This document shows, in pieces, positions 34,435 to 64,000 of a DNA stretch of 64,000 nucleotides (position 1 is its first letter; every line of letters begins with the position of its first letter). The notes beneath the pieces were generated by a model. The model worked only from the letters and a program-made list of their open reading frames with translations. It had not been told where the DNA came from and did no database searches. Made by a program: the position numbers and the translations under genes. Location of the stretch: positions 155,465-219,464 of IMG/VR virus record IMGVR_UViG_3300045051_000720; one strand, given 5' to 3'.

Positions 34435-37400
34435 ATGAACCCCCTCGATCAAGCCTTCCGCGCCCAGTTTGGTGACGCCTATCCCACTCGCCGCGCCGAG
34501 GCCGAGGCGTTCATGGAGCGGGCGCTGCAAAACGCGCTGGTGATGCGTTGGGTTGGGTCGTTATCCCCAGCTTTTCTCGCGGCGGTCGTGGCGAATCGGG
34601 CCGCTGTGCTCAACTGCCCTATTGCCGAGATCGACCCGACCTTTCAAGGTCCCGACGAGATCGACTGGCTTTGGCACTCCTACCGGGCCACGATCCGGCT
34701 TTTTGCCGACGACGAGCTATGAGGGATTCTCCCTACTGGACGATCGGGTGCCTTTCCGGTATCCTGCCCCCATGCCCTCTGAAGACGATTACTTCACCGA
34801 CCGCATCCGCAAGCTTGCGTCGGTGCGCCGCATGCACCATGAGCGCGCTACTGAGTCGATTTACCAACTGGAGCGCGGGTTGCCGGGGAACGATCCCCTC
34901 CGCGCCGCGTTTTATCGCCTGCGCACTGAGCTGGCGGCCCGTTATGCCGAGCTGATTGCGCGGGATAATCGACCGACCCAAACACCATGACCAACATGTC
35001 CTACTGCCGCTTCCGCAACACGCTGGAAGCCCTCCGCGAGTGTGCCGACGACCTCGCCAACAAGGAAACACTCGATGAGCTGGCGTCGGCCGACGAACGC
35101 GAAGCCGCGCGCCGTCTACTCAAGCTCTGCGATACGCTCGCGAGCGATTGGGGCATCGAGGTTGAGCAAGCCAGCCACAAGGGCTGACGAATCATGACGC
35201 CGCTCGAAAAGGCCGACGAGATACTTGCGGAAGCAATCCGCATTCGGGACACCCACAGCGGTTGTCACTCACTGCCGTCGAGCGTTTACGACCTGACTCA
35301 GTTCCGAAAAGCACTCGAACGCCATCCAGACGACGCCGAATCCCTTCTGGCGTGGATGGAGTTTACCATCGCCCATATCCGTCGCAAGGTCGGTTTGCTC
35401 AAGACCTGAGCTGTCACCCTCTTTATTATGTCCCGCCCACCCTTTACCCGCCCTCTTCCCGATCCCGTGCGTGACCGCACGGTTTACGTCACCGATCAGG
35501 TCTATACGCTCAAACGCACGCCTCCCGATCACGTCCGGGGGCTCGTCAAGGGCGCGAGGGTTCGGCTCATCACCGGGGTTGGTGACATACCCGGCGCGCA
35601 TCCCGATCACGACTGGCGAACGATCTGCCCGGCGCGCAGCAAGGTCGCGCAGTTCTATGGCGTGATGGCCAGCGATCTGCGGAAGGCGCGGAATGGGTCG
35701 ATTCGGCGAGTGGCTGTCACCGCATGAACCTTACCCCCGTCCGCCTCTACATCGGTGGGGCGTATCGCACGATCCCCGCGCGGGTGGATGGGCGAATTGC
35801 GGTCGTCAGCCTGCGGTGTCGCTCAATGAACGGCGAGGACTGCGATCGGTGGTTTCCGTTCGACACCCACCACGGAGCCAAGCTCGCGGATGGGTGCGGG
35901 ACGATGAAACGGGCGGTCGAGATCGGTCGTGAGACCATAGCCAGCATGGTCGGTGCTGGGGTGATCCCCCCGGTTGACAAACCGGCGAGAGGGTGTAAGG
36001 TGGGGGTATGACTCCCTTCTCTCATCTCACGGTCCTGCGCACCGGTCCCGCCGAGCGGTATGTTTTGGTGGACGACAACGGCGAGCATGTTATCAGCATG
36101 TACGCCGCCGACCCGCGCGGCAAGGAGCGTGCCGAGTGGCTGGCCGCGACAATCAATGGGCGTATCCCTGTCGTGGGCGCCGAGGCGGTTGACTGCCTGA
36201 CCACGCTTCTGCAAACCATCGCCGATGACGGGCAACTGGAACAACTCACCACCCCCGAGTTTCGCGCGCGGTGTGAAGCCATCACCGGTCCCATCAAGCG
36301 AGCCCTGTTCAAATGAGTGCGCAACGCTTCACCACCGACATCGGCGGTTTCATCGAGACCCACTCATCGCTCACCGTAGCCATCCGACACGTTGAGCAAT
36401 CGGCCTCATTTGCTTCCCCCATCGAGTGGGACGAAGAAAAGCGGCCCTATGGCACTGTTCACATCGCGCGTCAGATGGGCAGCGACCAATACCCGCGCAT
36501 CGTGGGCAAAGTGTTCGTGTCGGAGGTTACATGACCCTCATCGATCCCTCTACCGATCCCGTCTACCGTGTCCGCCGGGCTATGGAGAGACTGGAGTCAC
36601 TGAGTAACGGCGTTCATCGCTGCGCTACCACCGCGCAACTGATTGCCGATGGTTTTGCCGCTCTTGACACCCTTCGCGCGCCTGTTGTGGAGCCAGCCAC
36701 GCCCGCCGCGCAATGGACCGCCCTCAAGGCCGAGATGAGCGCACGCATCGAAGCGATTGACCGCGCCACTCCATGGGCCGAGACCGAGCCGCGCTGGTGG
36801 CTGGAGATGATGGAGGTCAAGAGGCACCTGCTGTGACCCATGGAGACCCGCATAATCCCCCTCCAAACCGCGCTTGACCTTCTCCACGCCTGCGTGGCGG
36901 TTGAGGCCAACGGCGAGTTGTGCCGTCCTATGTTCCCCGACTCCGACGATCCGCATGATCGCGATGTGTTCCTGCTTACCGCCCATTTCACCTTCCGCGC
37001 TGGTGACAACACCACTGTCCAAGCGCGCCCGGACGGGTTCGTGCTGCAAAGCGTTGGCGGGACGCGGGTGTTGGTGATGCCTCTGATGGGGTGCATGGGT
37101 TTGGGGTCTTCCCCTCACTAGACAGCACCCAACCATCTGCTATCCTCCCTCCATGAACCTGTTCATCGCTCTCGTCTTCGCCGCCGCCCTTTGGATGACG
37201 GACATCAACCTCGCCAACACCGCTGCCGCGGTCGCGGGGCGTCATGTCAACGGGGCCAATCCCCGCCATACCGGTATCGCCATGGCCCTGTTGTGGGGGC
37301 TGTTTTTCTATCTCGTCCGATGAACCCACTCCGCCCCGCCGCTGAAGCACGCGTTGATGCGATTTTCACCGCCGCCGCAGAATGGGTCGTTGCCTCGCGC

Positions 37401-37935: not shown

Positions 37936-40900
37936 ATGAGACCTTCCCGACCCGTCCAACCGAACCAGATCGACCTGCTGGCAGACGCTCCTGCCAATGC
38001 GCTGCTGTTCAGCGCGCTGTGCGAACAGATCAAACCCGACAGCCCTCTCTTCGGTCCCATCCGTAAGGACCACGGGCTCGTCACCCTTCAGATCGTGATC
38101 AACGGGGTGGAGCTGCCCAACCCGCTCACGGCACTGGAAAAGGTGGCCAAGGCGTGGGGCGAGCAGAGCGAGGCTGAAGTCGGTCGCCGTGCGCTGGAGA
38201 TGGTCACAGAAGCGGGTTTGACCGGGGTGCACGAGGCATTCGAGAAGACCCGCCGCACCATGGAGGAAGCCCGGCGCGAGCTGAAGCGCGTGCTGGTCGA
38301 GAAAGCGGGCGCGCAGTTCTATGGGGACGATGACTAGGGGCGACGCCCTATAGACACCTCCCACCCATCTGGTAGGATGACCCCATGACCTTCGATCAAA
38401 CCCTAGCCGCCCTCCCCCTGCGCCGCACCTACCCGCGCGGCAAGCTCCGCCCCATCAAACAGGCCGAGAGCGATGCCTTCAACGCGGCGGTGATGGCCTA
38501 CATGGAGGGCTATCCTCTGGCCCCGATCCGCGTTCCGACTGACGACTGGACCGCCGAGGGTCGGCGTCTGTGCTGCATGGCTCGGGATGAGGATGAGCAA
38601 GCGTGGCTGGTTGACACTGAGTTCGGACCCCTCCGCGTGGCGGTGCCGCGTCTTGATCACGAGGTGCTATTCACGGTCTGGACCTGCTTCATGGGCACGC
38701 CTGACCAGTGCTGCGCTGCGGCCAAAGCCTTCGACTCCAACCCCTTCAGCGGCAAGTGGAACGTGCACCAGTATGAGGCCGCAGACGCGCTGCGTCAGCT
38801 TGACCACCAACTCATGATGGCCAACGCCGCGAGCAAGCCAACCCCCGTTTTGGGGGTTTCTCCCCACTAGACACGGCGACCAAACCTGCTATCCTGAGAC
38901 CATGGACCCGACCACCGAACGCCACCTCCGCCGCATCGTCAAGGCCCCGCTTGCCCAGTGGGCAACCCTCGCGGCCAAGCTACCCCCGAGCCAACAGTTC
39001 GACATCGCCCGCGCGGTTGATTCCGACGCCGAACGGTGCGCGCTGCTGGGGGCGTATCTCAGTGCCCTGTCGTATGGGGCCGAGCACGCCACCGCCCGCA
39101 AACGCGCCGCGTGTGTCGTCACAAAGGTCCGCTCAGCAATGGGCTACTCCTACCCCGGCCAAGGCTTGGCGCAGGCGAGCTGGTAGGGTCTTTTCCCTAT
39201 TCCCATCCCCCGCCAACCTGCTACCATCGCCTTATGAAACGCTTAATCGCCTTCCTGACCCTCGCGGTTTTCACCGCTTTGTTCGCCGCCCCGTGTTCCG
39301 CCACCGAGACCCCGCGCACCTCAACCGAGGCCGTGTTTTACGCCCAAGGGGCGATTGACACCAACGCCGAAACGGCCCTCGCGCTGCCCGCACAACGCTC
39401 ATCCTTCCGCACCATGGCGGGGGTGAACCGAAACAACGCGGGGGTGTTTCTCGCCTTCGCGGCACTCACATCCGATCCGGCGCAGGCGGCGGCCAATCGG
39501 ATTATCGGGTTTTACTTCCTCGGGCGCGCCGACGCCTTCGATTTGCTCGCTGATCTGGAGGGCTGACCTTGGGGCATCGTCCCCGATCTGGACCTAGCCC
39601 CGGGTTGCCACGCGCGATCCGGGGCTTTGGGCGTCGCCAATGCTTGCGGTGTGCGTAATCGTTTTGCTTCTGATCGTGCTGGCGTCCAGCAGGGAGGAGT
39701 GAGGACAACTCCCTATGGTCAAACGCTCTCCCATCGCATACCCTACATCATGAAACCACGCTTCCCCCTTGGCCGCATCGTTGACGGCGGCCCGCCCATG
39801 CTCTACACGATCCGCGAGCTGCCTAGCGGCCTGTTCCTCTACCAACGCCGCCCGGAATACGGCTGGGGCCACAGCGCGCCCGGCTGGACGATTCACCGGG
39901 AGCAACCCGGCAAGGGGCGGCCGGTTGAATCAATCGGCCACGGTCGCACACTGCGAGAGGCCATCGAAAAGGCGAAGGGGATCAAGCCGTGAGCCCAGCA
40001 CAGGCCAAGCTCCTGCGCGAACTGATTGAGGCCGAACGGGCACACGCCGCCGCGGTGCTAGAGCACACGCGCCGCGAGGGGGAGGGATGGGCGTATCCCC
40101 AGCCCGGTCTCAGATGGGTTGAGGTAAGCGGCCCGACCGTCCGCACAGCTTACGCCCTTGCCGATGCGGGTCTTGTGGACCTAGAAGGACGCGCCGAGGG
40201 GCGGCAGTTGTGGGCGCGGCTCGCCATAGGGTAAACCCCCGACTAGACATCCCCTCTCGTTCTGGTAAACCGACCCGATGAAGACCTCCAAAGCCATCTA
40301 TGAGCAAACCGCCGCCATCCTGCGCGCGCGTCTGCCCGACGAACCCGACATGAGCAACGTTGGCGACTATTGGGCGGTGGAAAACGTGCGCCTGTTGGCG
40401 CTCGCTTTTGCCGATGCCTACACCGTCGACAACCCGAGGTTTGACCGATTCCGCTTCTTTGCGGCTTGCGGATTGGCGGGCAAATGACCAGCGAGCTTTA
40501 CTGGCGCGGCGGTCCGGCAGAGACCTCAGAACGCACGCTTGACCGCGACGGCGACACCTTTTGGGCCAAGCGCACGGCGCGCCGCTGTGCTAGGCAGATG
40601 CGAGAGCTAGCCGCCGCGCTGCCCGACGACGCCCCAAAGGCTGAACAGCGCCGGGCTTGCTTGCTCACTCGCGCCGCCGAGATCGAGGCGGGTCAATCCA
40701 ACCCCGTGCATCACTTTCGCGTTGCCGTGCCTTTCGAGCGTGTCGCCCCCTCCGGACGCAAGTCAAAGCGCGTGATGACGTACCCGTGTTCTGGTTGCCT
40801 GCTCTACACCTTCGACGAGGCTTGGCTTCTGATGGAGACCTTCGCCGCGCGCAGCTACGCCGCGGGCACGGAATGCGATGTGTGGGCGGAAGGACGCGGG

Positions 40901-42623
40901 CAGAATTTCACGCTCGACATCATCTATGACGGCATCGCCGACCCCATGCGCGAGGTATCGCCCGGCCCGTCTAGGGAGAATCCCTGATGGACACGCCGCG
41001 CGGAGCTGCTAGACTACGCCCGATGCACCTCACCTATACGATCAGCCCCGACCGTCGCACCCTCACGATCCGCGCCGATGAACGCACTCGCGTGGAGCTG
41101 CGCGAGTTGCTGGCAGAAAACCCCGACCGTGACAACCTGTGGGACGCTTTCGAGAACCTGATATGCAACAGCGAGCTGGGATGGATCGACCCCGCCACCT
41201 GTGGCGATCTGACGGACGCTCCGATCCTTGGCGTGCTGAGCGATGAACGCCCCGGCAAGGGCCGTGATGGGGACCTTGGAAGCGGGTCCGTCCTCGTTTC
41301 CACTGGGCGCGATGGGTTCACGGTCTGCGATGTGGTCGAACGGTGGGGCTTCATGTCCTACGCCGTGCGCGATCCCCTCGCGGACCTCTGCGACACAGGC
41401 GAGGCCGTTTTCACCGCGCCGTGATGCAAACCCTGCTAGACACTCACGCCGCCGGGCTGCGCGTTGATCGGGTCTCCCCGCACCGTTGGACGGTCTGGGC
41501 TCCTTCCGATCAAGCCGCCGACACCCTATCCCGCGCGCTGCTTCCGTTCATGGACGCCGGGGTTGAAGGCCACGAGTATTGGCGCACCCTTGGCGAGATC
41601 GTGCCTGTGAAGGTGATGCGGAAGGGCAGAGATCGCGTGAGGGTGCTTTCGCCCGGCTACCCGCCGCGCGGGATGTTTTCCAATCTCCGGGCGCTGGAGA
41701 GGGTGTTGACGGTAGGGTGATCTCCCGACTAGACATCCCATCCGGGTCTGATAGACTGCGCCCCGATGAAACACGCTAACGGCTTTTACTATCTCGCCCC
41801 CCTCCTACGCTGCGACACGATCCGCGATCTGCAATGGCGACTGACGCGCAAGGCAGAGCAACGCGATCCTCGCTTGCTGGAAACGGTCGAGGTTCGCCCG
41901 ATGGTATGGGACCGCCGCCACCGCGATCTCGTGGCTCAAGTCCACGCGCAGATCATGGAGCGTTGCAAGCGGTTGTTCCCGCGCCTGTTGCGCTCCTATG
42001 AGTGGATCGCCGAGCGCAACTGCGAACACCTTGCGACGTTGACTCCCGAACAGGCCCGCGCCGCGTTCGATCTGTATCACAACACCGGGTTAAACGGCGG
42101 ATCGTGGGGTTGTCTCGACTGGTTCGAGGTACTGCCCCCGGGTATCACCCATCAAGCCGCCGCCGATGCGTTGGGTGAAGGATTCACTGTTGATCGCGGC
42201 TGGCACAACGAGGGCGGGCGGTCTGTCAAGCGGCATAGTGAGTTCACCCCCGGCGCGGCGAAGCCACGCAAGGGGACAATGGTGGCGAAACGCATCTAGT
42301 GTGATCCCCCTCTGGTATTGACCCAACGATCTGCTATCCTACCCCCCATGACAACCCGCCAACGTTTGACTGAGGATCGCACGCGCCGCGCCAAGGTGGC
42401 GCAACAAGATCGCGTTTTCGCCTATATCGCCGAGCAACGCGCCGCCGATCCCCAAGCGTGGGACGCCAAGGTAAACGCTTTCGTGCTCGCCAACGATTGC
42501 GCCGGGGCCACCCTACAGCCTGACGGCTGGTTCACGGACCCGCAAGGGCGGCGGCTTTACCCCGTGGGCTCGGTGCGCTGGCAATGGGAGGAAGAACGAT
42601 TCGCGGCGGCAGAGTTGGGGTGA
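37936..42623 (+). other. mostly individually promoted hypothetical ORFs (37936-38337, 38385-38870, 38902-39186, 39234-39566 secreted, 39750-39992, 39989-40234, 40278-40487, 40484-40987, 41023-41424, 41424-41720, 41766-42299, 42348-42623)
   Basis: most start 6-8 nt after a -10 box of the palindrome-promoter module. Confidence 0.65.
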
Positions 42624-42667
42624 TCCCCCTATTGTGCTTCCCAGCCCCTATGGTATAGTCACCCCCG

Positions 42668-43297
42668 ATGAATCCGACTACCGAATCCCCCGAATCGCTC
42701 CCCGACTATCAGATCGCCGCGCAGGAGCTTGCCGCCCTTTGGGCCGCCCTTGGCTTCACTGCCGAGATCACTGGAGCACACGCTGCCATTGAGCCCGCCA
42801 CCTCTGCGGAGGGTCGCGAGTGGGCACACGTCGCCGCTACCGTCACGATCACCCGTCAGCCCATGGACAATGGGCACGGGCGCACGATGGGCAAAGCCGC
42901 TTCCGCGTCCTTTGACTGGAAAATGGGGATAGGTTTGGCCGATTGGCCCGCCATCCTCAAGCGCACGCATGTTTCATCCGACGACTACGTTGCGATCAAG
43001 GCCATGGCCGGGCATGGTTCCCTCTCCGCCGCCGCGCAGGTGAGGCTTGCCGCCAAGTACCTGCCGGCCTTTGTCAAGCAGGTCAACCCCGCCGAAGTGC
43101 TCGCGCGGTGTTGCGCGGACGGTCAAGAGGCTTCCGGCTCATCCTTTGAGGATTGGGCCGGCAATTTCGGTTACGATACTGACAGCCGCAAGGCGGAAGC
43201 CGTTTATCTCGCCTGTCAAGAGGCGGGAACCAAAGCGCGCAAACTGGTTGACGGCAACACGTTCGCGAAGCTTGCCGAGCTGGCAAACCGGCTTTAG
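42668..43297 (+). CDS. conserved hypothetical protein
   Basis: SFEDWAGNFGYDTDSRKAEAVYLAC motif seen in phage/plasmid hypotheticals. Confidence 0.7.
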   Translation: MNPTTESPESLPDYQIAAQELAALWAALGFTAEITGAHAAIEPATSAEGREWAHVAATVTITRQPMDNGHGRTMGKAASASFDWKMGIGLADWPAILKRTHVSSDDYVAIKAMAGHGSLSAAAQVRLAAKYLPAFVKQVNPAEVLARCCADGQEASGSSFEDWAGNFGYDTDSRKAEAVYLACQEAGTKARKLVDGNTFAKLAELANRL

Positions 43298-43346
43298 GGT
43301 TTCCCCTCACTTGACTCCCTCCCCCTATTGTGGGACACTGCGAGCG

Positions 43347-43730
43347 ATGAACAAACCCAACACACACGCCCCGGCCGCCACCGCGCAGACGATCAACACG
43401 CAAACGCCCGGCCCGCTCACCGTCGCAGCACTCTCTGGCAAGATCACCGCGGGCGGCATGACCATTGCGGCGAGCTACGATCTACGGCATGACAGCCACG
43501 GCAAGGAGGAGCATGCGAACCGGCGTTTGCTCGCCGCCAGTTACACCGCCTTTGACCGCGCCGGGCGCGAGCTTGGGATCGATGCGGTCGATCTGGCGGA
43601 ACGGATCGATCTCGCCGCGCTGATTCGTGCGGCCCGTGAACTGCTCGACGCCGCCGAGCGCGACACGTTCAAGAGTCACGGACGCGGGCAGAGTGAGATC
43701 GAAGCGATGCGCCGAGCATTGGCGATCTAG
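43347..43730 (+). CDS. hypothetical protein
   Basis: leaderless ATG 43347. Confidence 0.6.
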   Translation: MNKPNTHAPAATAQTINTQTPGPLTVAALSGKITAGGMTIAASYDLRHDSHGKEEHANRRLLAASYTAFDRAGRELGIDAVDLAERIDLAALIRAARELLDAAERDTFKSHGRGQSEIEAMRRALAI

Positions 43731-43779
43731 GGCCAACCCCCCATAGACACCTGCCCCGCTTTGGTCTAACCTTGGGACG

Positions 43780-44373
43780 ATGAAAACGATTGCGCTTCCC
43801 GTTACCGTCGCCGCTATGCGCGGCGAGAATCACCCGGCCGATTTTAAGCTTGCCTTGGCAGGCGGTTTGACTGCTCACATCCGAACCGAACGCGACGACG
43901 ATCACGAAGCCCCTTGGGAGGACGGCGACGGGCGCGGGATTGTGTCGAATTGGACAACCCGCGACAAGCGGCCCGGCGAGCGCGTTTTGTCTTCGGACGG
44001 ACGCAGCAAACGGTTTTACGATTACGCGGCGACCATTGAGATCGCCAAGCGTGACGGCTGGGACGCCCCGCCATACAAGACGGGAACGAAGGACCAACAG
44101 GCCGCGCGAGCCGTTGAGGCCGATTTCGAGTTTTGCCGCAGTTGGTGCGCCGATGAATGGGAGTATATTGGCGTGATCGTCACCCTTACGGACGGCACCG
44201 GGCGGAAGGTAGGCAAAGATTCGATTTGGGGGATCGAATCGTGCGAGAATCCCGGGCATGGGTTTTATTGGCACGAACAAGCGGCCGAAATGGTCAACGC
44301 CCTTGCCGAAGCGCACGCCGCGGAGAGTGCGGAACGTGCCGAGTGGGAAGCCCGGGACACGGTGACGATCTAG
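43780..44373 (+). CDS. conserved hypothetical protein
   Basis: DEWEYIGVIVTL..DSIWGIES motif. Confidence 0.7.
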   Translation: MKTIALPVTVAAMRGENHPADFKLALAGGLTAHIRTERDDDHEAPWEDGDGRGIVSNWTTRDKRPGERVLSSDGRSKRFYDYAATIEIAKRDGWDAPPYKTGTKDQQAARAVEADFEFCRSWCADEWEYIGVIVTLTDGTGRKVGKDSIWGIESCENPGHGFYWHEQAAEMVNALAEAHAAESAERAEWEARDTVTI

Positions 44374-57349: not shown

Positions 57350-58314
57350 CCCTTCCACCCCTCCTCGGGCCGCAGGTTTGCTTCCCTCCACTCATCCTCA
57401 TCTTCGGCTGGCAGCATGACACCCGACACCAGCGGCGTACCCTTTTTCTCCGCCGCCTCGGCCAGTTCAGTCAGATCTTTACGATCCGGCCACGGGCCGA
57501 TCGCCCGGAGGAACAAGAGGACCACGCCCTCGTTCTCGTGGCGCGAGTGAAGGGTCACCCGTGCGGTGTATCGCCTCCCGTCGCGGCGCGAGGTGTAGGT
57601 GTAGCGGTAGATGGGGTCGGTCATACCCTCACCGTCCCGTAGTTCTGCCCGCGCTTGCAGAAGGCAAAGGTGCCCACCACCTCGCCGCGCACCATCTCGC
57701 GCGCGAAGCCCGTGTCGAAATCGTCCATGAAAACGGTGAACGCGCGCGCAGTGGTCTTTGACACAAAACACAGGTACGCTGCGCTCCGCCCCCGCCGATA
57801 CCCATCATAGACCAGCGTGTCCTCAAACGGCGCGTTGGGTTTCCATACGATCTGATCGTGCTGACCGACCATCGGTTTGTCGCTGTTCCATCCCTGTTGA
57901 GTCTGCGGCGTGGGGTAGATGACCAAGCCCATCTCCTCGTGGGTGAATGTGCGGATGGGTTCGCGTTTTTGCGCACCATACCCATGCCACCCCCACACAT
58001 CCGTCCCATCCCAATCCTCGGCGCTTAGGTAGCGCGGGTAGGTGGGTTCGGGGTAGTGGAGCTGGTTACCCCACAGGTCGAAGGGGATGGGGCCGGCGTA
58101 GCGTTTACTGCTCATCGGGGAGGTCGAGCGGTTTGGTGGCGGTCAACTCGCATGCCCAGTGTTCCTTCTCGTCAACGGGGTCATCCCACGTGACGAGGTA
58201 GGTCAAGATCCCCTCTGCACGGACCAGATATCCAGTCACCATCCCTTTCCGCTCGGCGTTGACGACGAGATAGATGACCGATCCGATATCGTACTCGGGG
58301 GTGGGGAGTCTCAT
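57346..58314 (-). other. three coupled hypothetical ORFs (57346-57624, 57621-58115, 58105-58314)
   Basis: minus-strand tiling with overlaps. Confidence 0.6.
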
Positions 58315-58814
58315 TGCGCGCGAAACTGGGCCTCCAGTGCACGGCAGGCGGCCTGTTCGGCGGAGGTGAGTTCGGGCGGTCCGTCTGGGTCAAACGAGGC
58401 GAATAGCTCTGCCCACGGTGTGGGCGGCAACCGCACGGGTCGGCGCGGCGCGGTGTAGTCACCTCCTTCTATCCCAACGGACGTTAACGCATCACGATAC
58501 GTCAAGCTGTTGCACAGGCCCGATACGAACGCTATGGCCTCGTCCAGATCGACTCGGAAGAACTCACGTCCCTCGTTCACGCGCGCATTATCAAATCGTT
58601 CATGGGTAAGGCGTTCCGCCTCAAATGCATCGTCGAAGTCGTGGTAGTATGCCAAGATCATCTCTTCGGGTACCCCGGTCCCCGCGCTCAGCTCTTTCGC
58701 TCGCTGAAGGGGGTGCTTGCGCGTGGCCCCGATCTTGACCAACCCGGGCATGTGGGGATTGGCCACCAAGTAGACAAAACCTTGGCGACCGTTGTCAAGA
58801 TAGAGCGAGGACAT
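58311..58814 (-). CDS. T5orf172/MUG113-type GIY-YIG-family nuclease
   Basis: GFVYLVANPHMPGLVKIGAT..P.QRAKEL..TGVP..AE..H..REFF; leaderless promoter TTGACA-17-TACCAT-6-ATG on minus strand. Confidence 0.85.
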   Translation of the reverse strand: MSSLYLDNGRQGFVYLVANPHMPGLVKIGATRKHPLQRAKELSAGTGVPEEMILAYYHDFDDAFEAERLTHERFDNARVNEGREFFRVDLDEAIAFVSGLCNSLTYRDALTSVGIEGGDYTAPRRPVRLPPTPWAELFASFDPDGPPELTSAEQAACRALEAQFRAQ

Positions 58815-58948: not shown

Positions 58949-59815
58949 ATGACAGCACACATCAATGTGGACCTCAAGGTCCACGTCAACGGCAACGCAG
59001 TTGCTACCTATACCCACGAGGGTCGCACCTACGTGGAGGCTCGCGAGGGGTCTGAATACGCCCTCTTCATCAAGAACAACAACCCCTTCCGCGTGAAGGT
59101 GGTTCTTAGCGTCGACGGAATCAACGTGGTTGGAGGCGAGGCCGCCACAGGCGAGCGCGAGGAGACGGGCTATATCCTCGATGCCTATCAATCGACCACC
59201 ATCAAGGGCTATCGCGTCGATGACAACACCGTCGCCGCTTTTCGCTTCACCAAAGCGGACGGCGGTTATGCCAAGGCCGAGAAGGGCCTGACGGGCACTA
59301 CAGGCGTGATTGGCTGCCGGGTGTGGCGAGAAAAACCCGCGCCCGCACCCGTCATCAAGGAGATCCATCACCATCATGGTTCGTATGGCCAGCTGTGGCC
59401 CTATCGTCCGCGCTACTATGGCGATCCCATCTGGTACTGGAACGACTCATCTTTTTGCACGCTGACGTGCGGTACCAGCAATGTGGCAGGAGGTGCAGTG
59501 GCTTACAACGCCTGTGCGCAAGCGTCTGTCGACAATGCCGTGCGCATGATGAACTGCTCCATGCAGTCCTCGACGCAGTTGGTCCCAGAGACTAACCCCT
59601 TTGACGCCGGGTCTACGTGGGGCGGGAAAGTCGAGTCTAAGGTTACTGCGGTCGGCTTCGAGGCTGAGACCTTGCTGGACACCCTCACCATCTACTACGC
59701 TTTCAAGGCGGGGTTGATGGCGTTGGGCGTAGACACGAGCCGCGCCCAGAAGGTGGCCTTCCCACAAGCGTTTAGCGGGGCCTACTGCAAGCCACCCGCG
59801 AGTTGGGTAGGCTAA
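58949..59815 (+). CDS. conserved hypothetical protein (288 aa)
   Basis: EGSEYALFIKNN..VVLSVDGINV..GYIL..IKGYR..FRF..GVIG motifs; AGGAG RBS. Confidence 0.75.
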   Translation: MTAHINVDLKVHVNGNAVATYTHEGRTYVEAREGSEYALFIKNNNPFRVKVVLSVDGINVVGGEAATGEREETGYILDAYQSTTIKGYRVDDNTVAAFRFTKADGGYAKAEKGLTGTTGVIGCRVWREKPAPAPVIKEIHHHHGSYGQLWPYRPRYYGDPIWYWNDSSFCTLTCGTSNVAGGAVAYNACAQASVDNAVRMMNCSMQSSTQLVPETNPFDAGSTWGGKVESKVTAVGFEAETLLDTLTIYYAFKAGLMALGVDTSRAQKVAFPQAFSGAYCKPPASWVG

Positions 59816-59928
59816 GCGCCGTACACCTGCCGCGCGCCCGTTTCAGGGCCGAGCCCGCGCCGCGCGCGGCGGTGTATCTCTCATCGGTGGGTCACCACCT
59901 GTTCTTTTCTGCGCCAACCCCTCATCCA

Positions 59929-60705
59929 TTGAGCAACAAACGCCGTCTGGCCAAAGCCAAGTCTCATCCTGCCACCACAATTCAGCTTCCCGTTGATCGC
60001 AGTCCAAAGGTCCATCAACGAGACAAGCTGAGTCAAACGCTAGCCATCCGACAACGCGACGATCTAACCGAACGACAGAAGGTCATCCTAGAGACCGCAC
60101 TACATCGCGACACCCGTGCGCTTTTTATTGACGGTGTGTGGGGCAGCGGTAAGACCTATCTCGCTGTACTCGCGTCCCTTATGTTGCTTAACACCGGGCG
60201 TGTTGACCAAATCGTTTACATTCGCAACCCGATTGAGGCTACCACGACAGGCAAGCTGGGTTATCTCAAAGGCGATCAGGGGGAGAAGATGGCTCCTTAC
60301 TGTGCGCCTCTCTATGACAAGCTAGACGAGATGCTCTGCAAGGGAGACATCGACTCTTTGGTCAAGGATGATCGTGTAGAAACACTACCCCTCGGCTTCA
60401 TCCGTGGACGCAGCTGGAACTGCAAAGCCATTATCGTAGACGAGGCCTCGTCTATGACGTGGGACGATCTGTTACTCATCCTCTCGCGATGCGGTGAGTT
60501 CACTCGCGTCTTCCTAATCGGAGACAGTATTAACCAGAACGACATCGGGTCTAAAGCGGGCTTTCGCCGCATGTTTGCTACTTTCGACGACCCCGACAGC
60601 AAGGAGCATGGGGTGTTTGCATTCGAACTGCGCGAACCGAGCGACATCGTGAGGAGTCGGTTTCTACGCTACGTGATGACCAAGACGGGGGTCATAAAAG
60701 GATAG
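59929..60705 (+). CDS. phoH: PhoH-family ATPase
   Basis: Walker A GVWGSGKT, PLGFIRGRSW..IIVDEAS..LSR.GE..GD..Q.D motifs. Confidence 0.9.
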   Translation: MSNKRRLAKAKSHPATTIQLPVDRSPKVHQRDKLSQTLAIRQRDDLTERQKVILETALHRDTRALFIDGVWGSGKTYLAVLASLMLLNTGRVDQIVYIRNPIEATTTGKLGYLKGDQGEKMAPYCAPLYDKLDEMLCKGDIDSLVKDDRVETLPLGFIRGRSWNCKAIIVDEASSMTWDDLLLILSRCGEFTRVFLIGDSINQNDIGSKAGFRRMFATFDDPDSKEHGVFAFELREPSDIVRSRFLRYVMTKTGVIKG

Positions 60706-60729
60706 CCCATCAAGTGTATAGTCAACGTC

Positions 60730-61437
60730 ATGTCTTACGGACTCATCTATCTCGCCACTAATCAAGATAACGGGCTCAAATATATCGGACAGACTGTGGC
60801 TACCCTCATCACGAGACGCCAAAAACACATTGATTCGGTAAACGCGGGTAGCACGACCTATTTTCACAACGCGATGCGTAGTCATGGGATAAACGCATTT
60901 GCGTTTACTGTGATCGATACCGCCGACTCCCAAGATGAACTAGACCGCAAAGAGCGGTATTGGATACAGTATTATGAGACTCGCGAGCGCACTAAGGGAT
61001 ATAACACCAAAGACGGCGGTAAACTAGGTGCCGTCCTCAACGAAGATATTATCCGCAAAATCAGTCAAGCCAATACAGGTAAAAAACGTTCCCCGGAAGC
61101 ACGAGCGAAAATGTCGGCCCGCAAAAAGGGTATCCCTAATCCCGCGCATTCGGAACGGATGAAACGTCTGTTTCAGGAGAGACCTAGCTGGTGGATAGGC
61201 AAGACGCATACCGAGGACACAAAGAGGCTACTGGCCGATAAACACCGAGGCAAACACCATTCGCCACATACGCAATACCCGTCAGTAACTATACAATGCG
61301 TGGAGACGGGTGTAATTTTCCCGTCCATCTCTGCCGCGGCACGCCATGTAGGTGTCAATCCGTCAGGCTTCGACCGGCTTAAAAAACATCCGAATCAGCG
61401 TGTCAAAGGGTTTCATTGGGTGCGTCTGACAGCTTAA
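60730..61437 (+). CDS. GIY-YIG homing endonuclease with NUMOD3-like repeats
   Basis: GLIYLATN..KYIGQT..R..H..E.YWI..GYN; TGKKRSPEARAKMS and GKTHTEDTKRLL repeats; low GC. Confidence 0.9.
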   Translation: MSYGLIYLATNQDNGLKYIGQTVATLITRRQKHIDSVNAGSTTYFHNAMRSHGINAFAFTVIDTADSQDELDRKERYWIQYYETRERTKGYNTKDGGKLGAVLNEDIIRKISQANTGKKRSPEARAKMSARKKGIPNPAHSERMKRLFQERPSWWIGKTHTEDTKRLLADKHRGKHHSPHTQYPSVTIQCVETGVIFPSISAAARHVGVNPSGFDRLKKHPNQRVKGFHWVRLTA

Positions 61438-61441
61438 TTAA

Positions 61442-61570
61442 CCCTCCTACCGCGAGAAGGGTATCCACTACGTATCCTTCACGGAGGATGACATCCTGCG
61501 GTCCGGCATCACCCGCGAACTGGTCAAGGCCCTAGCTGCTTACCGGGCCTCAATCAGGCCAGCTCACTAA
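61442..61570 (+). pseudogene. orphan phoH 3' fragment
   Basis: PSYREKGIHYVSFTEDDILRSGITRELVKALAAY..* with no start codon; parallels the last ~35 aa of the upstream PhoH. Confidence 0.75.
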
Positions 61571-63219
61571 TACTGGACTCCAACCACCCGCCAGTTAGAC
61601 GCATCACTGCGTACGGTCACGCCCTGCCCCTGCCCGCTGACCACCCAGCTGGACAGTCCATTGATGGTCTGAGCACCCACCGGGACCACCGCCACGCGAT
61701 TGGCTGAACTGTCAGTTTTGATCACGGTGAACTGCTGGCCGAGATTGAACTCGGCGGTCGGTAGATAACCCGTGCGCGGCCCCGAGGTGGCGTCCATCAG
61801 CAGCGTGTCCCACCGGAAGTCGAGAGTGGCGTTGGCGGTGGACGAATAGACGGGGACACTGATCGCCTTGTTGAAATCCTGCGTGCCCGGCCCGAGGTTA
61901 CCGAAGGCCTGCGCGCCGCTGATGAATCCCGGCGAAGGGAGGGCCATGAACCCCGCTGAATCAGCGCGGGCAGTGTTGTTGCCCTCGAACAGGAGGCTGC
62001 GGAACCCCACGGTAGCATTGGCGGTATAGAACGAAATACCCGCCACGTCCGCGCGCCCGCTGAACATGTTGCCACAGAGGTTCAGCCCGTTGCAGATGTA
62101 GTCGGCGTCCAAGAACACGAAATCGAAGCCGCTGACCGTGGAGAACGAGTTCCCGCAGATGGACAGATCGTTCCACGCCTTCGCATTGATGCCGTGCGCG
62201 CCGTTGGTGATGCCGATGATCATGGCGATGTTGTTGCCCATGATCTTGATGTTGTCGCTGTACTGGAGGTCCACATGCGTGCCGGTGAAGCCGGTGACGT
62301 GGTTGCCCGTGACCGTGACGAAGGTGGAGCCCGAGTTGAGGCTGATGGCGTTGCCAGTGCTCAGCACACCAGCCGCGGACCGCCCATCAATCGTGTTGCC
62401 CGTCACCGTGACCTCCGAACAGGCGGCCACCTCGATGCCGTACGTGCTCGGCGCGTTGATGACGTTGCCAGACACCGTCATCTTTTTCGATCCAGACAGC
62501 GAGATCCCCATGGTCACGCCGCGAATGGTGTTGCCGGTCACCGCGCAGGAGTCCACGCTCGTTTGCAGCTCAATCCCCTGCACGATGGTACCCTCAAGGA
62601 TGTTGTTCGCGATGGTGTGGCCGCCATAGGGGGCACTCGCTGTCCCATGGAAGGTGATGCCGCTGCCGCCGCTGATGGCCGCACCGAGGTAGTTGCCCAC
62701 GATGCGGCAGTTCACCGGCTGGGTGCCGCCGCTGGTGTTGCCGAAAATCGCGGTGCCGTAGGCGGTGAAGCGGTTATCGCGAATCAGGATGTCCGAGCAC
62801 GCGCCGAGCACGCGCACGCCGCAGTCGGCGGTGTTCTGGAACGTGCAGTCGGCCACCGTGATCTTGGAGCAGGTGATGAGGTCAATCAGCCCGTTGTTGA
62901 CCGCCGCCGCCGCGCTGACCCACGCGCCGTCCAGCGTGAAGCCGTAGAACTGGACGTTCGTGCGGCTGGTGCAGGTGAACATCACGTATTGGGCCTCGCT
63001 GGACCCAATCAGTTTGGCCCCATAGCCCATGAACCGCATGTTGTCGTTGGTGATGGTCAGGGCCGCGCTCAGTTTGTATGTGCGACCGGACTGGAATACG
63101 ACCGACCCGCCCGGCCCAGCCGCCGTGATCGCACGCGTGATGGCCGCGTAATCGTCGATGACGCCATCGCCCACCGCACCATAATCGGCTACGTTGACTG
63201 TATAGGTTGTGTTTGCCAT
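61567..63219 (-). CDS. tailspike/depolymerase-like right-handed beta-helix protein (pectate lyase 3-like)
   Basis: VNVADYGAVGDGVIDDYAAITRAI N-terminus followed by many parallel beta-helix repeats (VTGNTI, ISGNVI); ATG at 63219. Confidence 0.85.
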   Translation of the reverse strand: MANTTYTVNVADYGAVGDGVIDDYAAITRAITAAGPGGSVVFQSGRTYKLSAALTITNDNMRFMGYGAKLIGSSEAQYVMFTCTSRTNVQFYGFTLDGAWVSAAAAVNNGLIDLITCSKITVADCTFQNTADCGVRVLGACSDILIRDNRFTAYGTAIFGNTSGGTQPVNCRIVGNYLGAAISGGSGITFHGTASAPYGGHTIANNILEGTIVQGIELQTSVDSCAVTGNTIRGVTMGISLSGSKKMTVSGNVINAPSTYGIEVAACSEVTVTGNTIDGRSAAGVLSTGNAISLNSGSTFVTVTGNHVTGFTGTHVDLQYSDNIKIMGNNIAMIIGITNGAHGINAKAWNDLSICGNSFSTVSGFDFVFLDADYICNGLNLCGNMFSGRADVAGISFYTANATVGFRSLLFEGNNTARADSAGFMALPSPGFISGAQAFGNLGPGTQDFNKAISVPVYSSTANATLDFRWDTLLMDATSGPRTGYLPTAEFNLGQQFTVIKTDSSANRVAVVPVGAQTINGLSSWVVSGQGQGVTVRSDASNWRVVGVQY

Positions 63220-63233
63220 GGGTGTGGGGGTGC

Positions 63234-63530
63234 TTACATCATGCGGAGCCACGAGCCGCCGTCGCTCTGAAGGACGACACAAGCGTATGGAGTGACCGTG
63301 CAGTTGGTACCGTAGTCCACAGAACCGGTGAGCAGGAGAGACGCGCCGGTATTGATGCTCTTGATCGTGAGTTGAGCGCCGGAGATGACGCTCGGCGCGG
63401 CCAACGTGCCGGTCCACGAGAGTGCTCCTTGGCCCGACCAGAGGTAGCGCGAACCGTAGCCGCTGAGCGTAAAATTGCCGGTCACGTTGGACCAAGGGAG
63501 GAGGGTGAATTGTGTAGGGAAATAGGCCAT
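63234..63530 (-). CDS. small tail-associated protein
   Basis: 98-aa beta-rich ORF ending LQSDGGSW. Confidence 0.6.
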   Translation of the reverse strand: MAYFPTQFTLLPWSNVTGNFTLSGYGSRYLWSGQGALSWTGTLAAPSVISGAQLTIKSINTGASLLLTGSVDYGTNCTVTPYACVVLQSDGGSWLRMM

Positions 63531-63533
63531 GGG

Positions 63534-64000
63534 TTATAGAATCGCCCACACCGTGCCGTCATATTGCGCAATAACGGCGTCGCCAGTATTGAGGGGCATG
63601 GTAGCGGCGGTAGTGTTGGTAAAGAGGTTGGCACCATTACCTGAGACCGTGATCAATCCCGCCCCCTTGTTCTTTATCAGGTACCGCTGGCCCGTGCCGG
63701 GGCCGGCGGGCAGCGTCACGGTGAAGGCCGAGCCGGAGTTGCAGACCACGGTGTCATACGAGGTGTCAAGGGTCGTGCCGGTGGTGATGACTGCGATCTT
63801 GGACAGCCGACCGCCGGCCGTGGAGAGATTACCAGTCCCGGAGACGGTGAGGTTGCCGGCGAGGGTGGCGTTGCCTGTGGTGCCTAACGAGAAAATGGAT
63901 GAGCCGCCGTCAACCGTCATATACAGCGTGGTCGCGCCGCCGAAAATGTCCCAATCATGCGCCCCCGAACGGGTCAATCGGAGTTGACCGTCTGCGCTGG
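63534..64000 (-). CDS. tail fibre/virion protein, 5'-truncated by window edge
   Basis: frame open to the window end; Gly/Thr-rich fibre repeats then YDTVVCN..FTVTLP..YLIKN..YDGTVW domain. Confidence 0.7.
   Translation of the reverse strand, partial: SADGQLRLTRSGAHDWDIFGGATTLYMTVDGGSSIFSLGTTGNATLAGNLTVSGTGNLSTAGGRLSKIAVITTGTTLDTSYDTVVCNSGSAFTVTLPAGPGTGQRYLIKNKGAGLITVSGNGANLFTNTTAATMPLNTGDAVIAQYDGTVWAIL

What the first reader, a model, noticed from the sequence alone, without database searches (positions are those of the whole stretch)
59929..61570. Homing endonuclease cassette that appears to have replaced the 3' end of phoH
Seen: a complete phoH ends ..PDSKEHGVFAFELREPSDIVRSRFLRYVMTK. After the low-GC GIY-YIG gene comes a start-less fragment, PSYREKGIHYVSFTEDDILRSGITRELVKALAAY*, which is a second, divergent PhoH C-terminus. 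Inference: the endonuclease invaded within phoH carrying its own replacement 3' end, which would be cleavage-resistant and keep the gene intact without splicing. The original tail was displaced downstream, making this an intron-less homing footprint.
Basis: partly seen in the sequence, partly recalled or inferred. Interest (0 to 1): 0.65.

Follow-up and report, generated by a model that had tools for sequence, protein, structure and literature searches.

The report
Nuclease gene beside phoH, stray tail
In a roughly 220-kb soil phage, a complete phoH gene is followed by a mobile GIY-YIG nuclease gene and then by the orphaned last 42 codons of a different phoH type; the same trio recurs in related phages, where the orphan tail still evolves like a working gene.

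Summary
A complete phoH lies at 59929-60705. A GIY-YIG/NUMOD3 nuclease gene lies at 60730-61437. A start-less 42-codon PhoH C-terminus lies at 61442-61570; it ends ...AAYRASIRPAH*, not ...AAY*.

- **No replaced 3' end.** The intact phoH is one type ("A") along its whole length, with no junction. Five nuclease-free relatives end in the same A-type tail.
- **The fragment is a different type.** It belongs to "B", which is about 40% identical to A overall.
- **B alleles exist at this locus.** More distant but syntenic relatives (L210-L212) carry a whole B-type phoH at this same place. The phage group therefore has two alleles here.

My best reading is an intron-less, nuclease-driven allele replacement: phoH-A plus the nuclease overwrote a B allele, and only the B tail survived.

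The surprise is that the same trio, with the same junction, occurs in three other lineages (GC 0.42-0.55). There the tail shows 10 synonymous against 2 non-synonymous changes, with saturated third positions. So it is not a decaying footprint. It is either renewed from working B alleles or translated.

In this window the tail has no start codon and is shut by two stops, so it is probably silent. There is no intron signal. No RNA data exist.

The parts
58311..58814 (-). T5orf172/MUG113-domain gene, transcribed divergently. It is the conserved left neighbour of phoH in every relative, whether A-type, B-type or nuclease-bearing.
   Evidence: Pfam T5orf172 60.8 bits. Homologues lie next to phoH in L022-L024, L038-L040 and L210-L213.
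58949..59815 (+). 288-aa gene of unknown function (weak DUF7918 match) between T5orf172 and phoH. It is present in the nuclease-bearing relatives L022 and L044 and in L213. It is absent from L023, L024, L038, L039 and L040.
   Evidence: It is 52% identical to the L022 homologue.
59929..60705 (+). Complete A-type phoH (258 aa, TTG start). It is the only PhoH gene in the 219-kb genome.
   Evidence: Pfam PhoH E 9.8e-37, profile 6-200/205. It is the only PhoH match over cut-off in the genome. It is 74-80% identical to relatives along its whole length, and its tail scores 102.7 bits on the A-tail HMM against 32.4 on the B-tail HMM. The AF2 model has pLDDT 86; residues 222-253 form a short helix, the last beta-strand (229-234) and the C-terminal helix (244-253).
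60706..60729 (+). 24-nt spacer between the phoH stop and the nuclease start. It is too short to hold an intron core.
   Evidence: Sequence. No Rfam match.
60730..61437 (+). Free-standing GIY-YIG homing-endonuclease gene (235 aa): catalytic domain, two NUMOD3 motifs and one C-terminal helix-turn-helix repeat. The last repeat seen in its orthologues is missing.
   Evidence: Pfam. Alignment A3 with orthologues from L022, L044 and L042 keeps the conserved Arg, Glu and Asn columns; the window protein ends at the second ...HWVRLT repeat. Low GC.
61435..61441 (+). TAATTAA: the nuclease's stop codon overlaps a stop in the fragment's frame. A further stop (TGA 61427-61429) lies in the fragment's frame just upstream.
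   Evidence: Sequence, read by hand.
61442..61570 (+). Start-less 42-codon B-type PhoH C-terminus. The PhoH-homologous core is 61442-61543. Its stop overlaps the stop of the convergent downstream gene.
   Evidence: GC3 is 0.74-0.79, resident-like. Counterparts lie at L022:7757-7882, L044:2576-2707 and L042:1021-1140.
61567..63219 (-). Convergent beta-helix (pectate-lyase-like) protein, probably a tail fibre or spike. It marks the right border of the locus. The longer ORF runs to 63549.
   Evidence: Pfam Beta_helix 66 bits, NosD, End_N_terminal. It is called as 550 aa in the independent contig.

Best explanation
This is a phoH locus that went through an intron-less, homing-endonuclease-driven allele replacement.

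Phages of this group are about 190-220 kb. They carry phoH next to a divergent T5orf172 gene, and the gene comes in two types, A and B, that are only about 40% identical.

I infer the following sequence. A phage carrying phoH-A with a free-standing GIY-YIG nuclease gene behind it met a phage carrying phoH-B. The nuclease cut the 3' part of phoH-B. The two gene bodies are too different to recombine, so repair copied the whole A gene together with the nuclease gene. Only the B piece downstream of the break survived, about 42 codons.

PhoH-A is complete, so no splicing is needed.

Shown:
- the three parts and their types;
- the existence of both alleles at the same locus;
- the same three-part arrangement in three other lineages;
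- protein-like constraint on the B tail in those lineages.

Inferred:
- the cut site;
- the direction of replacement;
- why the tail stays conserved.

For the conservation I favour renewal from working B alleles at each homing event, with the tail serving as the right-hand homology arm. Translation of the tail is the alternative.

In this window the nuclease has lost its last DNA-binding repeat. The tail has no start codon and two stops ahead of it, so here it is most likely an unexpressed remnant.
For: **Types.** The window PhoH is A-type throughout. The fragment scores 37.7 bits on the B-tail HMM against 7.0 on the A-tail HMM.

**B alleles at the same place.** L211 (a 190,671-bp contig), L210 and L212 share T5orf172, a 69-aa gene, DUF4326 and HSP20 with the window group. 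They carry a whole B-type phoH beside T5orf172. It is 59% identical to B-type P0289 and 42% to the window PhoH, and scores 78 bits on the B-tail HMM against 36 on the A-tail HMM.

**Position.** The fragment's stop overlaps the stop of the convergent gene. The phoH stop sits the same way in nuclease-free relatives: overlapping in L023 and L040, and 12 nt away in L024.

**Patchy nuclease.** It is present in the window, L022, L044 and L042/43. It is absent from L023, L024, L038, L039, L040 and L210-L213.

**Composition.**
- The fragment's third positions match each host genome to the extreme: GC3 0.79, 0.85, 0.21 and 0.24.
- In the window, L042 and L022 the nuclease is shifted towards the middle: 0.51, 0.61 and 0.40. 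In L044 it is not, at 0.31.
- In the three nuclease-bearing genomes where phoH-A is known, it is shifted towards the middle: 0.62, 0.44 and 0.47.

This pattern fits a resident tail and travelling genes, though weakly.

**No intron.**

**Precedent.** In fungal mitochondria, mobile endonuclease ORFs leave a native C*-terminal downstream (PMC3630166; PMC6279837). Free-standing nucleases in T4-like phages are described in PMC2988022.
Against: - The five nuclease-free relatives closest by PhoH all have the A allele. No close relative with a B allele was found, although those relatives were found with PhoH-A as query, which biases the sample.
- phoH-A is not a compositional outlier in this genome (GC3 0.62 against 0.68 +/- 0.095).
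- The ratios of divergence of the nuclease and phoH are alike for window-L022 and L022-L044. This looks like long vertical co-inheritance rather than recent homing.
- The known B alleles are only 0.59-0.76 identical in DNA to the fragments, so no present-day homology arm is shown.
- The PhoH tree is star-like. It neither unites nor firmly separates the nuclease-bearing lineages.
- No cleavage data exist.
Confidence: 0.5

Rival explanations
1. Cargo model. The resident gene was always A-type. The nuclease gene arrived from a former home inside a B-type phoH and brought the B tail downstream of it as a hitch-hiker. The pair was inserted once, just behind the A-type stop codon, and has been inherited vertically since.
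For: - Five nuclease-free relatives have A-type phoH at this place.
- In L022, L044 and L042 the nuclease ORF ends inside or just before the B-derived sequence. B homology reaches ..IFDWFNQPSS.. upstream in L044. That is what an ORF inserted into a B gene would look like.
- The fragments of L022, L044 and L042 share derived residues (K-H, C[V/L]SF) against full-length B tails.
- Divergence ratios among the nuclease and phoH fit vertical descent.
Against: - In the window, L042 and L022 the fragment's GC3 differs from the nuclease's, although both would have arrived together. In L044 the two are close, 0.24 against 0.31.
- B alleles do occur at this very locus in the group.
- The fragment ends where a native phoH would end relative to the next gene.
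- An insertion exactly behind a stop codon needs an unexplained illegitimate event.
Confidence: 0.25
2. Translated mini-gene. This concerns function, not origin, so it can be combined with either origin model. The B tail encodes the last strand and helix of the PhoH fold. It is made as a small protein or as an extension of the nuclease, and is kept by selection on that product.
For: - L022 against L044: 10 synonymous to 2 non-synonymous changes in 34 codons, pN 0.02, pS 0.47, binomial p 7.5e-6.
- DNA identity is 0.82-0.88 in the fragment. It is 0.37 just downstream and 0.47-0.57 in the spacers.
- All pairs show positions 1+2 far more conserved than position 3 (Fisher p from 2e-2 down to 7e-7).
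- The conserved residues are the PhoH family's own (G, I, F, D, I, R, S).
- No minus-strand ORF longer than 25 aa covers it.
- The fragment is in the +1 frame relative to the nuclease in all four lineages (my reading).
- Gene callers predict 55-62-aa ORFs in L042 and L044.
- About 25 short PhoH-tail ORFs exist among cluster representatives.
Against: - There is no conserved start. L044 has ATG and L042 has GTG, but L022 and the window have none.
- I saw no convincing ribosome-binding site or slippery site when reading the sequences.
- The window's frame is shut by TGA 61427 and TAA 61439.
- All seven further nuclease orthologues end ...W.Y.. without any fused tail.
- There are no RNA data.
Confidence: 0.2
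3. The nuclease cassette carried only a cleavage-resistant replacement 3' end. The phoH body is native, and the displaced piece is its original tail.
For: The layout matches the fungal mitochondrial cases: inserted C-terminal, then endonuclease ORF, then native C*-terminal (PMC3630166).
Against: The body and tail of the intact gene are both A-type with no breakpoint. Nuclease-free A-type relatives have the same tail. The fragment's type is about 40% identical overall, so it cannot be the original tail of this body.
Confidence: 0.04
4. Intron or recoding. The nuclease gene sits in a self-splicing intron or a bypassed segment, and the mature PhoH carries the downstream tail.
For: Both tails are conserved, so a use for the second tail is wanted.
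Against: - No Rfam family matches at E up to 10.
- Non-coding spacers of 24 and 4 nt leave no room for a ribozyme core.
- The RNA fold is unremarkable, z = -1.0.
- Nuclease-free relatives have the upstream tail as their only tail.
Confidence: 0.02

Closest known systems
Mobile endonuclease ORFs with a duplicated gene C-terminus in fungal mitochondria (Allomyces macrogynus atp6; Glomus atp6, atp9, cox2, nad3; Endoconidiophora cob, atp6). Sources: PMC3630166, PMC6279837.
   Same: The layout is a complete gene, then an endonuclease ORF (GIY-YIG in some cases), then a divergent start-less C-terminal piece of the same gene family. No intron is needed. The events are explained by a double-strand break and repair.
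   Different: In those cases the in-gene tail is the foreign one, and the displaced tail matches ORF-less close relatives almost perfectly. Here the in-gene tail matches its own body and the nuclease-free A-type relatives. The displaced tail belongs to another allele class about 40% identical overall. It is old (third positions are saturated between lineages) yet still constrained. The host is a large phage, not an organelle.
Intron-less homing by free-standing Seg and Mob nucleases of T4-like phages (PMC2988022).
   Same: The nuclease is a free-standing GIY-YIG gene with NUMOD motifs lying between genes. Its presence among relatives is patchy. Flanking markers are expected to be co-converted.
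   Different: No cleavage or cross data exist here. T4 cases exchange near-identical flanks. Here two alleles that cannot be aligned at the DNA level seem to have been swapped, leaving a piece of the loser behind.
Genes split by nuclease insertion: Aeh1 nrdA/mobE, T4 gene 39/60 with mobA, phage 25 gene 43 (PMC2988022).
   Same: A nuclease gene lies between an upstream coding part and a downstream piece of the same protein family, and the downstream piece is under selection in relatives.
   Different: In the split genes the upstream part lacks what the downstream part supplies, and both parts have their own starts. Here the upstream gene is complete, and the window's downstream piece has no start.
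I-TevI-like GIY-YIG endonucleases.
   Same: The protein has an N-terminal GIY-YIG catalytic domain, NUMOD3 linker motifs and a C-terminal helix-turn-helix. At 235 aa its size is similar to the roughly 245 aa of I-TevI, a figure I quote from memory.
   Different: It is not encoded in an intron. The C-terminal domain matches are below Pfam cut-offs (I-TevI_DNA-bd 12.4 bits, NUMOD1 12.5 bits).

Membership tests
PhoH-like ATPase (PF02562): gene 59929-60705 | Full-length match to the family profile above the curated cut-off. | tested here: met
   126.9 bits against a cut-off of 27, profile 6-200/205. The AF2 model has pLDDT 86.
PhoH-like ATPase: fragment 61442-61570 | Match to the C-terminal part of the family profile, at the right profile position and above chance. 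| tested here: met
   Pfam alone gives no hit for the 42 aa. A custom PhoH HMM gives 8.7 bits at positions 224-252 of 259, against at most 4.1 bits in 1000 shuffles. The B-tail HMM gives 37.7 bits, E 4.9e-14. The counterpart in L022 is 65% identical over 40 aa to a full-length PhoH.
GIY-YIG homing endonuclease (free-standing, Seg-like) | GIY-YIG catalytic domain with its conserved residues. | tested here: met
   PF01541 38.4 bits against a cut-off of 22.6. The Arg, Glu and Asn columns are invariant in alignment A3.
GIY-YIG homing endonuclease (free-standing, Seg-like) | A DNA-binding region made of NUMOD or helix-turn-helix modules. | tested here: met
   NUMOD3 34 bits against a cut-off of 20.4, in two stretches. 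The helix-turn-helix matches are below cut-off. One repeat fewer than the orthologues.
GIY-YIG homing endonuclease (free-standing, Seg-like) | Patchy presence among otherwise syntenic relatives. | tested here: met
   Present in 4 lineages and absent from 9 syntenic loci.
GIY-YIG homing endonuclease (free-standing, Seg-like) | Site-specific cleavage of the nuclease-free allele, and super-Mendelian inheritance. | not testable with these tools
   Needs protein, substrates or phage crosses.
Fungal-mitochondrial-type endonuclease ORF with inserted C-terminal and native C*-terminal | The in-gene tail is foreign, differing from ORF-less close relatives. The displaced tail is the native one, matching them. 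| tested here: not met
   The in-gene tail matches five nuclease-free relatives. The displaced tail matches only the B allele of more distant syntenic relatives, at about 55% amino-acid identity.
Group I intron with an endonuclease ORF | A ribozyme core flanking the ORF and exons that join to a continuous gene. | tested here: not met
   No Rfam match at E up to 10. Spacers of 24 nt and 4 nt. The upstream ORF is already complete.
Gene split by a nuclease (genes in pieces) | The upstream piece lacks the segment encoded downstream, and the downstream piece has its own start. | tested here: not met
   The upstream PhoH reaches profile position 200 of 205. The window fragment has no start and stops lie ahead of it.

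The most novel reading that the evidence does not exclude
The orphan PhoH tail is a working part of the mobile cassette, not a scar. One possibility is a built-in right-hand homology arm. This would let the nuclease overwrite a non-homologous allele (B) with its own linked allele (A), and the arm would be renewed from working B genes at every homing event. The other possibility is a small translated PhoH-tail protein. Either would be a new way for a free-standing homing endonuclease to carry and maintain a piece of its target gene across lineages that have drifted from 42% to 61% GC.
Probability: 0.35. Interest if true: 0.75.

Novelty: new variant of a known kind. Interest (0 to 1): 0.55.

Why it matters
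Free-standing homing endonucleases are thought to spread by dragging near-identical flanking DNA along. This locus suggests that one has swapped two phoH alleles that share no usable DNA homology and left a datable piece of the loser behind.

The arrangement is the phage counterpart of the duplicated C-termini known from fungal mitochondria, but with two differences. The roles of the two tails are reversed. The orphan piece stays under protein-like constraint in at least three lineages.

This turns a vague idea, that nucleases shuffle whole alleles between phages, into something testable. The tests are to cut B-type phoH with the enzyme, look for close relatives with intact B alleles, and ask whether the tail is translated. 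It also shows that phoH, a widely used phage marker gene, is a repeated target of homing elements: a free-standing GIY-YIG gene here, and a LAGLIDADG-bearing insertion in L036.

Tried and rejected
- **Rfam** at E up to 10 over 59500-62000: no intron or other RNA family. The RNA fold of 61400-61620 is unremarkable, z = -1.0. Promoter and terminator scans were at chance level.
- **blastn against GenBank phages:** no match. tblastn with PhoH and with the 288-aa protein gave only distant hits (25-35%), including Rhizobiales jumbo phages.
- **The 42-aa fragment as a related-loci query:** too short.
I did not pursue it. I built no joined phoH-plus-fragment sequence and did not search with one.
- **Close relatives of the nuclease or the 288-aa gene in IMG/VR:** none.
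- **Distant GIY-YIG relatives.** Of 80 loci in IMG/VR, only one has a PhoH nearby, and it is convergent, so the association is specific to this nuclease lineage. The 80 loci from species genomes are all distant.
- **A second PhoH copy** that might act as a conversion donor: none in this genome. The L022 record is not held.
- **A minus-strand ORF** as the source of the codon periodicity: excluded.
- **Complex prediction** of L022 PhoH with the L022 fragment ORF: no verdict, score 0.29 against a mark of 0.34. This is not evidence either way.
- **Sequencing runs:** one DNA run (rhizosphere metagenome) and no RNA. Read laying on 1901 letters laid nothing.
- **Similar orphan gene pieces near the other nuclease genes of this genome:** nothing convincing.
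- **DNA identity of the fragments to known B alleles:** only 0.59-0.76, so a present-day homology arm is not shown.

No alternative genetic code was used.
Full report
**Setting.** The window is the last 64 kb of a 219,464-bp IMG/VR virus record, estimated 96% complete, with GC 0.59. The only public run that holds the stretch is a rhizosphere metagenome.

**What is there.**
- **phoH.** On the + strand, a PhoH gene runs from TTG 59929 to 60705. The longer ORF starts at 59803. Pfam PhoH scores E 9.8e-37 and covers profile positions 6-200 of 205.
- **Nuclease gene.** After a 24-nt spacer comes a 235-aa gene at 60730-61437 with a GIY-YIG domain (38.4 bits) and NUMOD3 motifs (34 bits). Its GC of 0.496 is the 12th lowest of 253 ORFs.
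- **Fragment.** The nuclease's stop sits in TAATTAA, which also closes the next frame. From 61442 to 61570 a start-less frame reads PSYREKGIHYVSFTEDDILRSGITRELVKALAAYRASIRPAH*.
- **Right border.** The fragment's stop overlaps the stop of a convergent beta-helix (tail-fibre-like) gene.
- **Assembly check.** An independent 27,960-bp Logan contig has the same gene order.

**Is the fragment a PhoH tail?** Yes.
- Against its own gene's tail it is weak: score 31, reached by 118 of 2000 shuffles.
- An HMM built from 124 PhoH proteins places it at positions 224-252 of 259 with 8.7 bits. A thousand shuffles never exceeded 4.1 bits.
- An HMM of one PhoH subfamily's tails gives 37.7 bits, E 4.9e-14.
- In an AlphaFold2 model of the intact protein (pLDDT 86), the matching residues form a short helix, the last beta-strand (229-234) and the C-terminal helix (244-253).

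**Two types of phoH.**
- I call the window's gene A-type. Its tail reads ..GVFAFELREPSDIVRSRFLRYVMTKTGVIKG.
- The fragment is B-type, like ..GIHCFSFTKEDIVRSGILKYIVERIE.. in full-length proteins such as P0125, P0127 and P0289.
- The two types are about 37-42% identical overall.
- The window's gene is A-type in every 30-residue window from residue 31 on. It is 0.64-0.86 identical to A and 0.25-0.45 to B, tail included. There is no breakpoint.

**Relatives without the nuclease.**
- *Found with PhoH as query.* I found syntenic loci in which phoH is followed at once by a convergent gene: L023, L024, L038, L039 and L040/L041. These contigs reach 170 kb (L023) and have GC 0.48-0.58. All have A-type genes ending ..FELRE..DIVRS.FLRYVM.KTGVIK... 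However, these relatives were found with an A-type query, so the sample is biased.
- *Found through the neighbouring T5orf172 gene.* This search gave L210, L211 (a 190,671-bp contig) and L212. They share T5orf172, a 69-aa gene, DUF4326 and HSP20 with the window group. They carry a whole B-type phoH at the same place.
- *L213.* It has a more distant A-like phoH plus a homologue of the window's 288-aa gene, and no nuclease.
- *Conclusion.* The phage group holds two alleles at one locus, and the window's orphan tail belongs to the one it no longer has.

**Relatives with the nuclease.** The same trio occurs in three other lineages:
- L022, a 200,510-bp contig with GC 0.42;
- L044, GC 0.44;
- L042/L043, GC 0.55.

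In each, a complete A-type phoH (only its end is seen in L042) is followed by an orthologous GIY-YIG gene, then by a B-type tail starting at the same residue (PSS/PT..EG). The nucleases are 35-81% identical. The tail is in the +1 frame relative to the nuclease in all four, by my reading. In the three relatives the nuclease's stop lies in or just before B-derived sequence.

**The orphan tail is not decaying.**
- Between L022 and L044, the 34 homologous codons carry 10 synonymous and 2 non-synonymous changes: pS 0.47, pN 0.02, binomial p 7.5e-6.
- DNA identity in the tail is 0.82-0.88. That is as high as in phoH and higher than in most of the nuclease. The sequence just downstream is unalignable (0.37), and the spacers are 0.47-0.57.
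- Between the window and L022, identity by codon position is 0.59/0.74/0.15. In the first 24 codons it is 0.75/0.83/0.12, the same pattern as the working tail at 0.78/0.82/0.20.
- No minus-strand ORF explains this.
- Third positions have gone all the way to each genome's bias: GC3 is 0.79 and 0.85 in the GC-rich genomes, and 0.21 and 0.24 in the AT-rich ones.

**How can a start-less piece look selected?** I see two answers.
- **(a) Renewal.** Each homing event into a B allele recombines within the tail, so the orphan piece is repeatedly resampled from working genes and serves as the right-hand homology arm.
  - For: the two alleles at one locus, the patchy nuclease, the resident-like GC3 of the tail, and the middle-shifted GC3 of phoH-A and of three of the four nucleases in nuclease-bearing genomes.
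  - Against: no close B-allele relative was found. Known B alleles are only 0.59-0.76 identical in DNA to the fragments. The divergence ratios of the nuclease and phoH look like vertical co-inheritance.
- **(b) Translation.**
  - For: the conserved residues are the family's own. Gene callers predict 55-62-aa ORFs in L042 and L044. Many short PhoH-tail ORFs exist in public data.
  - Against: no conserved start or shift site. Nuclease orthologues carry no fused tail. The window's frame is shut by two stops.
- I cannot decide between them. There are no RNA data, and a complex prediction gave no verdict.

**The window's copy.** Its nuclease ends at the second ..HWVRLT repeat and lacks the third helix-turn-helix repeat of its orthologues. 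The tail begins five to seven codons later than in L022 and L044, and its second half is more diverged, although the hydrophobic spacing of a helix is kept. I read this as a deletion that removed the nuclease's last repeat together with the head of the tail. That leaves an unexpressed remnant here.

**Origin.**
- I favour allele replacement: phoH-A plus the nuclease overwrote a B allele (confidence 0.5).
- The cargo model is the main rival: the nuclease plus the B tail was inserted behind a resident A gene (0.25).
- The PhoH tree is star-like. The nuclease-bearing lineages are not united, but one origin is not excluded.
- The strict replaced-3'-end model is contradicted (0.04).
- An intron is very unlikely (0.02).

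**Comparison with what is known.**
- The layout matches the mobile endonuclease ORFs of fungal mitochondria that leave a native C*-terminal downstream (PMC3630166, PMC6279837). In those cases, though, the in-gene tail is the foreign one and the displaced tail is nearly identical to ORF-less relatives. Here the roles are reversed, and the displaced piece is old but constrained.
- The nuclease resembles the Seg-type free-standing enzymes of T4-like phages and their intron-less homing (PMC2988022).
- A full-text search for phoH together with homing endonuclease and GIY-YIG found no description of such an arrangement.

**Limits.**
- No cleavage, expression or cross data exist.
- Only four nuclease-bearing lineages have sequence.
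- The selection test rests on 34 codons.
- The look-up caps stopped me from reading the contexts of five further nuclease orthologues.

Noticed in passing
L036:2912-4753 (+): A B-type PhoH ORF of 614 aa carries an insertion of about 340 aa just after the P-loop region. PhoH HMM positions 10-75 and 57-253 are separated by it. The insertion has a LAGLIDADG_3 domain (27.3 bits), so it is probably an intein with a homing endonuclease. phoH is thus hit by more than one kind of homing element.
   Followed up: partly
window 58311-58814 (-): A T5orf172/MUG113-domain gene lies divergently beside phoH in every relative examined (A-type, B-type and nuclease-bearing). I recall this domain as belonging to the GIY-YIG clan, so the neighbour may itself be nuclease-related. 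I did not test that.
   Followed up: partly
window 60730-61437 (+) against L022:6835-7743, L044:1654-2571, L042:90-1034: The window's nuclease has NUMOD3 motifs where L022, L044 and L042 have a first helix-turn-helix repeat. It also lacks their third repeat. Orthologues P0171 and P0172 are about 50 aa longer than the three-repeat forms, with an extra segment after the catalytic domain that looks NUMOD3-like by eye. The DNA-binding part of this nuclease lineage is being reshuffled.
   Followed up: partly
L128:41-289 and L129:511-714: These are orphan PhoH-tail mini-ORFs (82 and 67 aa; 36.5 and 28.6 bits at HMM positions 213-253) with no phoH or nuclease gene in the short contigs. In L129 the next gene is DnaJ-like. 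In L128 an AT-rich stretch and an ATG precede the ORF. About 25 further short PhoH-tail ORFs appear among cluster representatives.
   Followed up: partly
window 61567-63219 (-) and 63234-63977 (-): A beta-helix/pectate-lyase-like protein with an endosialidase-type N-terminal match, probably a tail spike, lies convergent to the phoH block. The genes right of phoH differ in every relative, so phoH sits at the edge of a variable region.
   Followed up: no
genome outside the window: G000:C1:38283-38519 (-), 117106-117348 (-), 136738-136875 (+): There are three further GIY-YIG matches in the same genome (one over the cut-off) and a set of low-GC ORFs (GC 0.42-0.50), probably other mobile genes. A weak 25-aa similarity links a small ORF at 35331-35465 to residues 682-706 of the 1658-aa gene at 39353-44326, near the nuclease gene at about 38.3 kb.
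   Followed up: no
window 58949-59815 (+): The 288-aa gene upstream of phoH has distant homologues (25-30%) in the jumbo phages Sinorhizobium phage Phosso, Agrobacterium phage Atu_ph07 and Rhizobium phage RHph_I1_18. The sample is from a rhizosphere. This is a weak hint at a soil alphaproteobacterial host.
   Followed up: no
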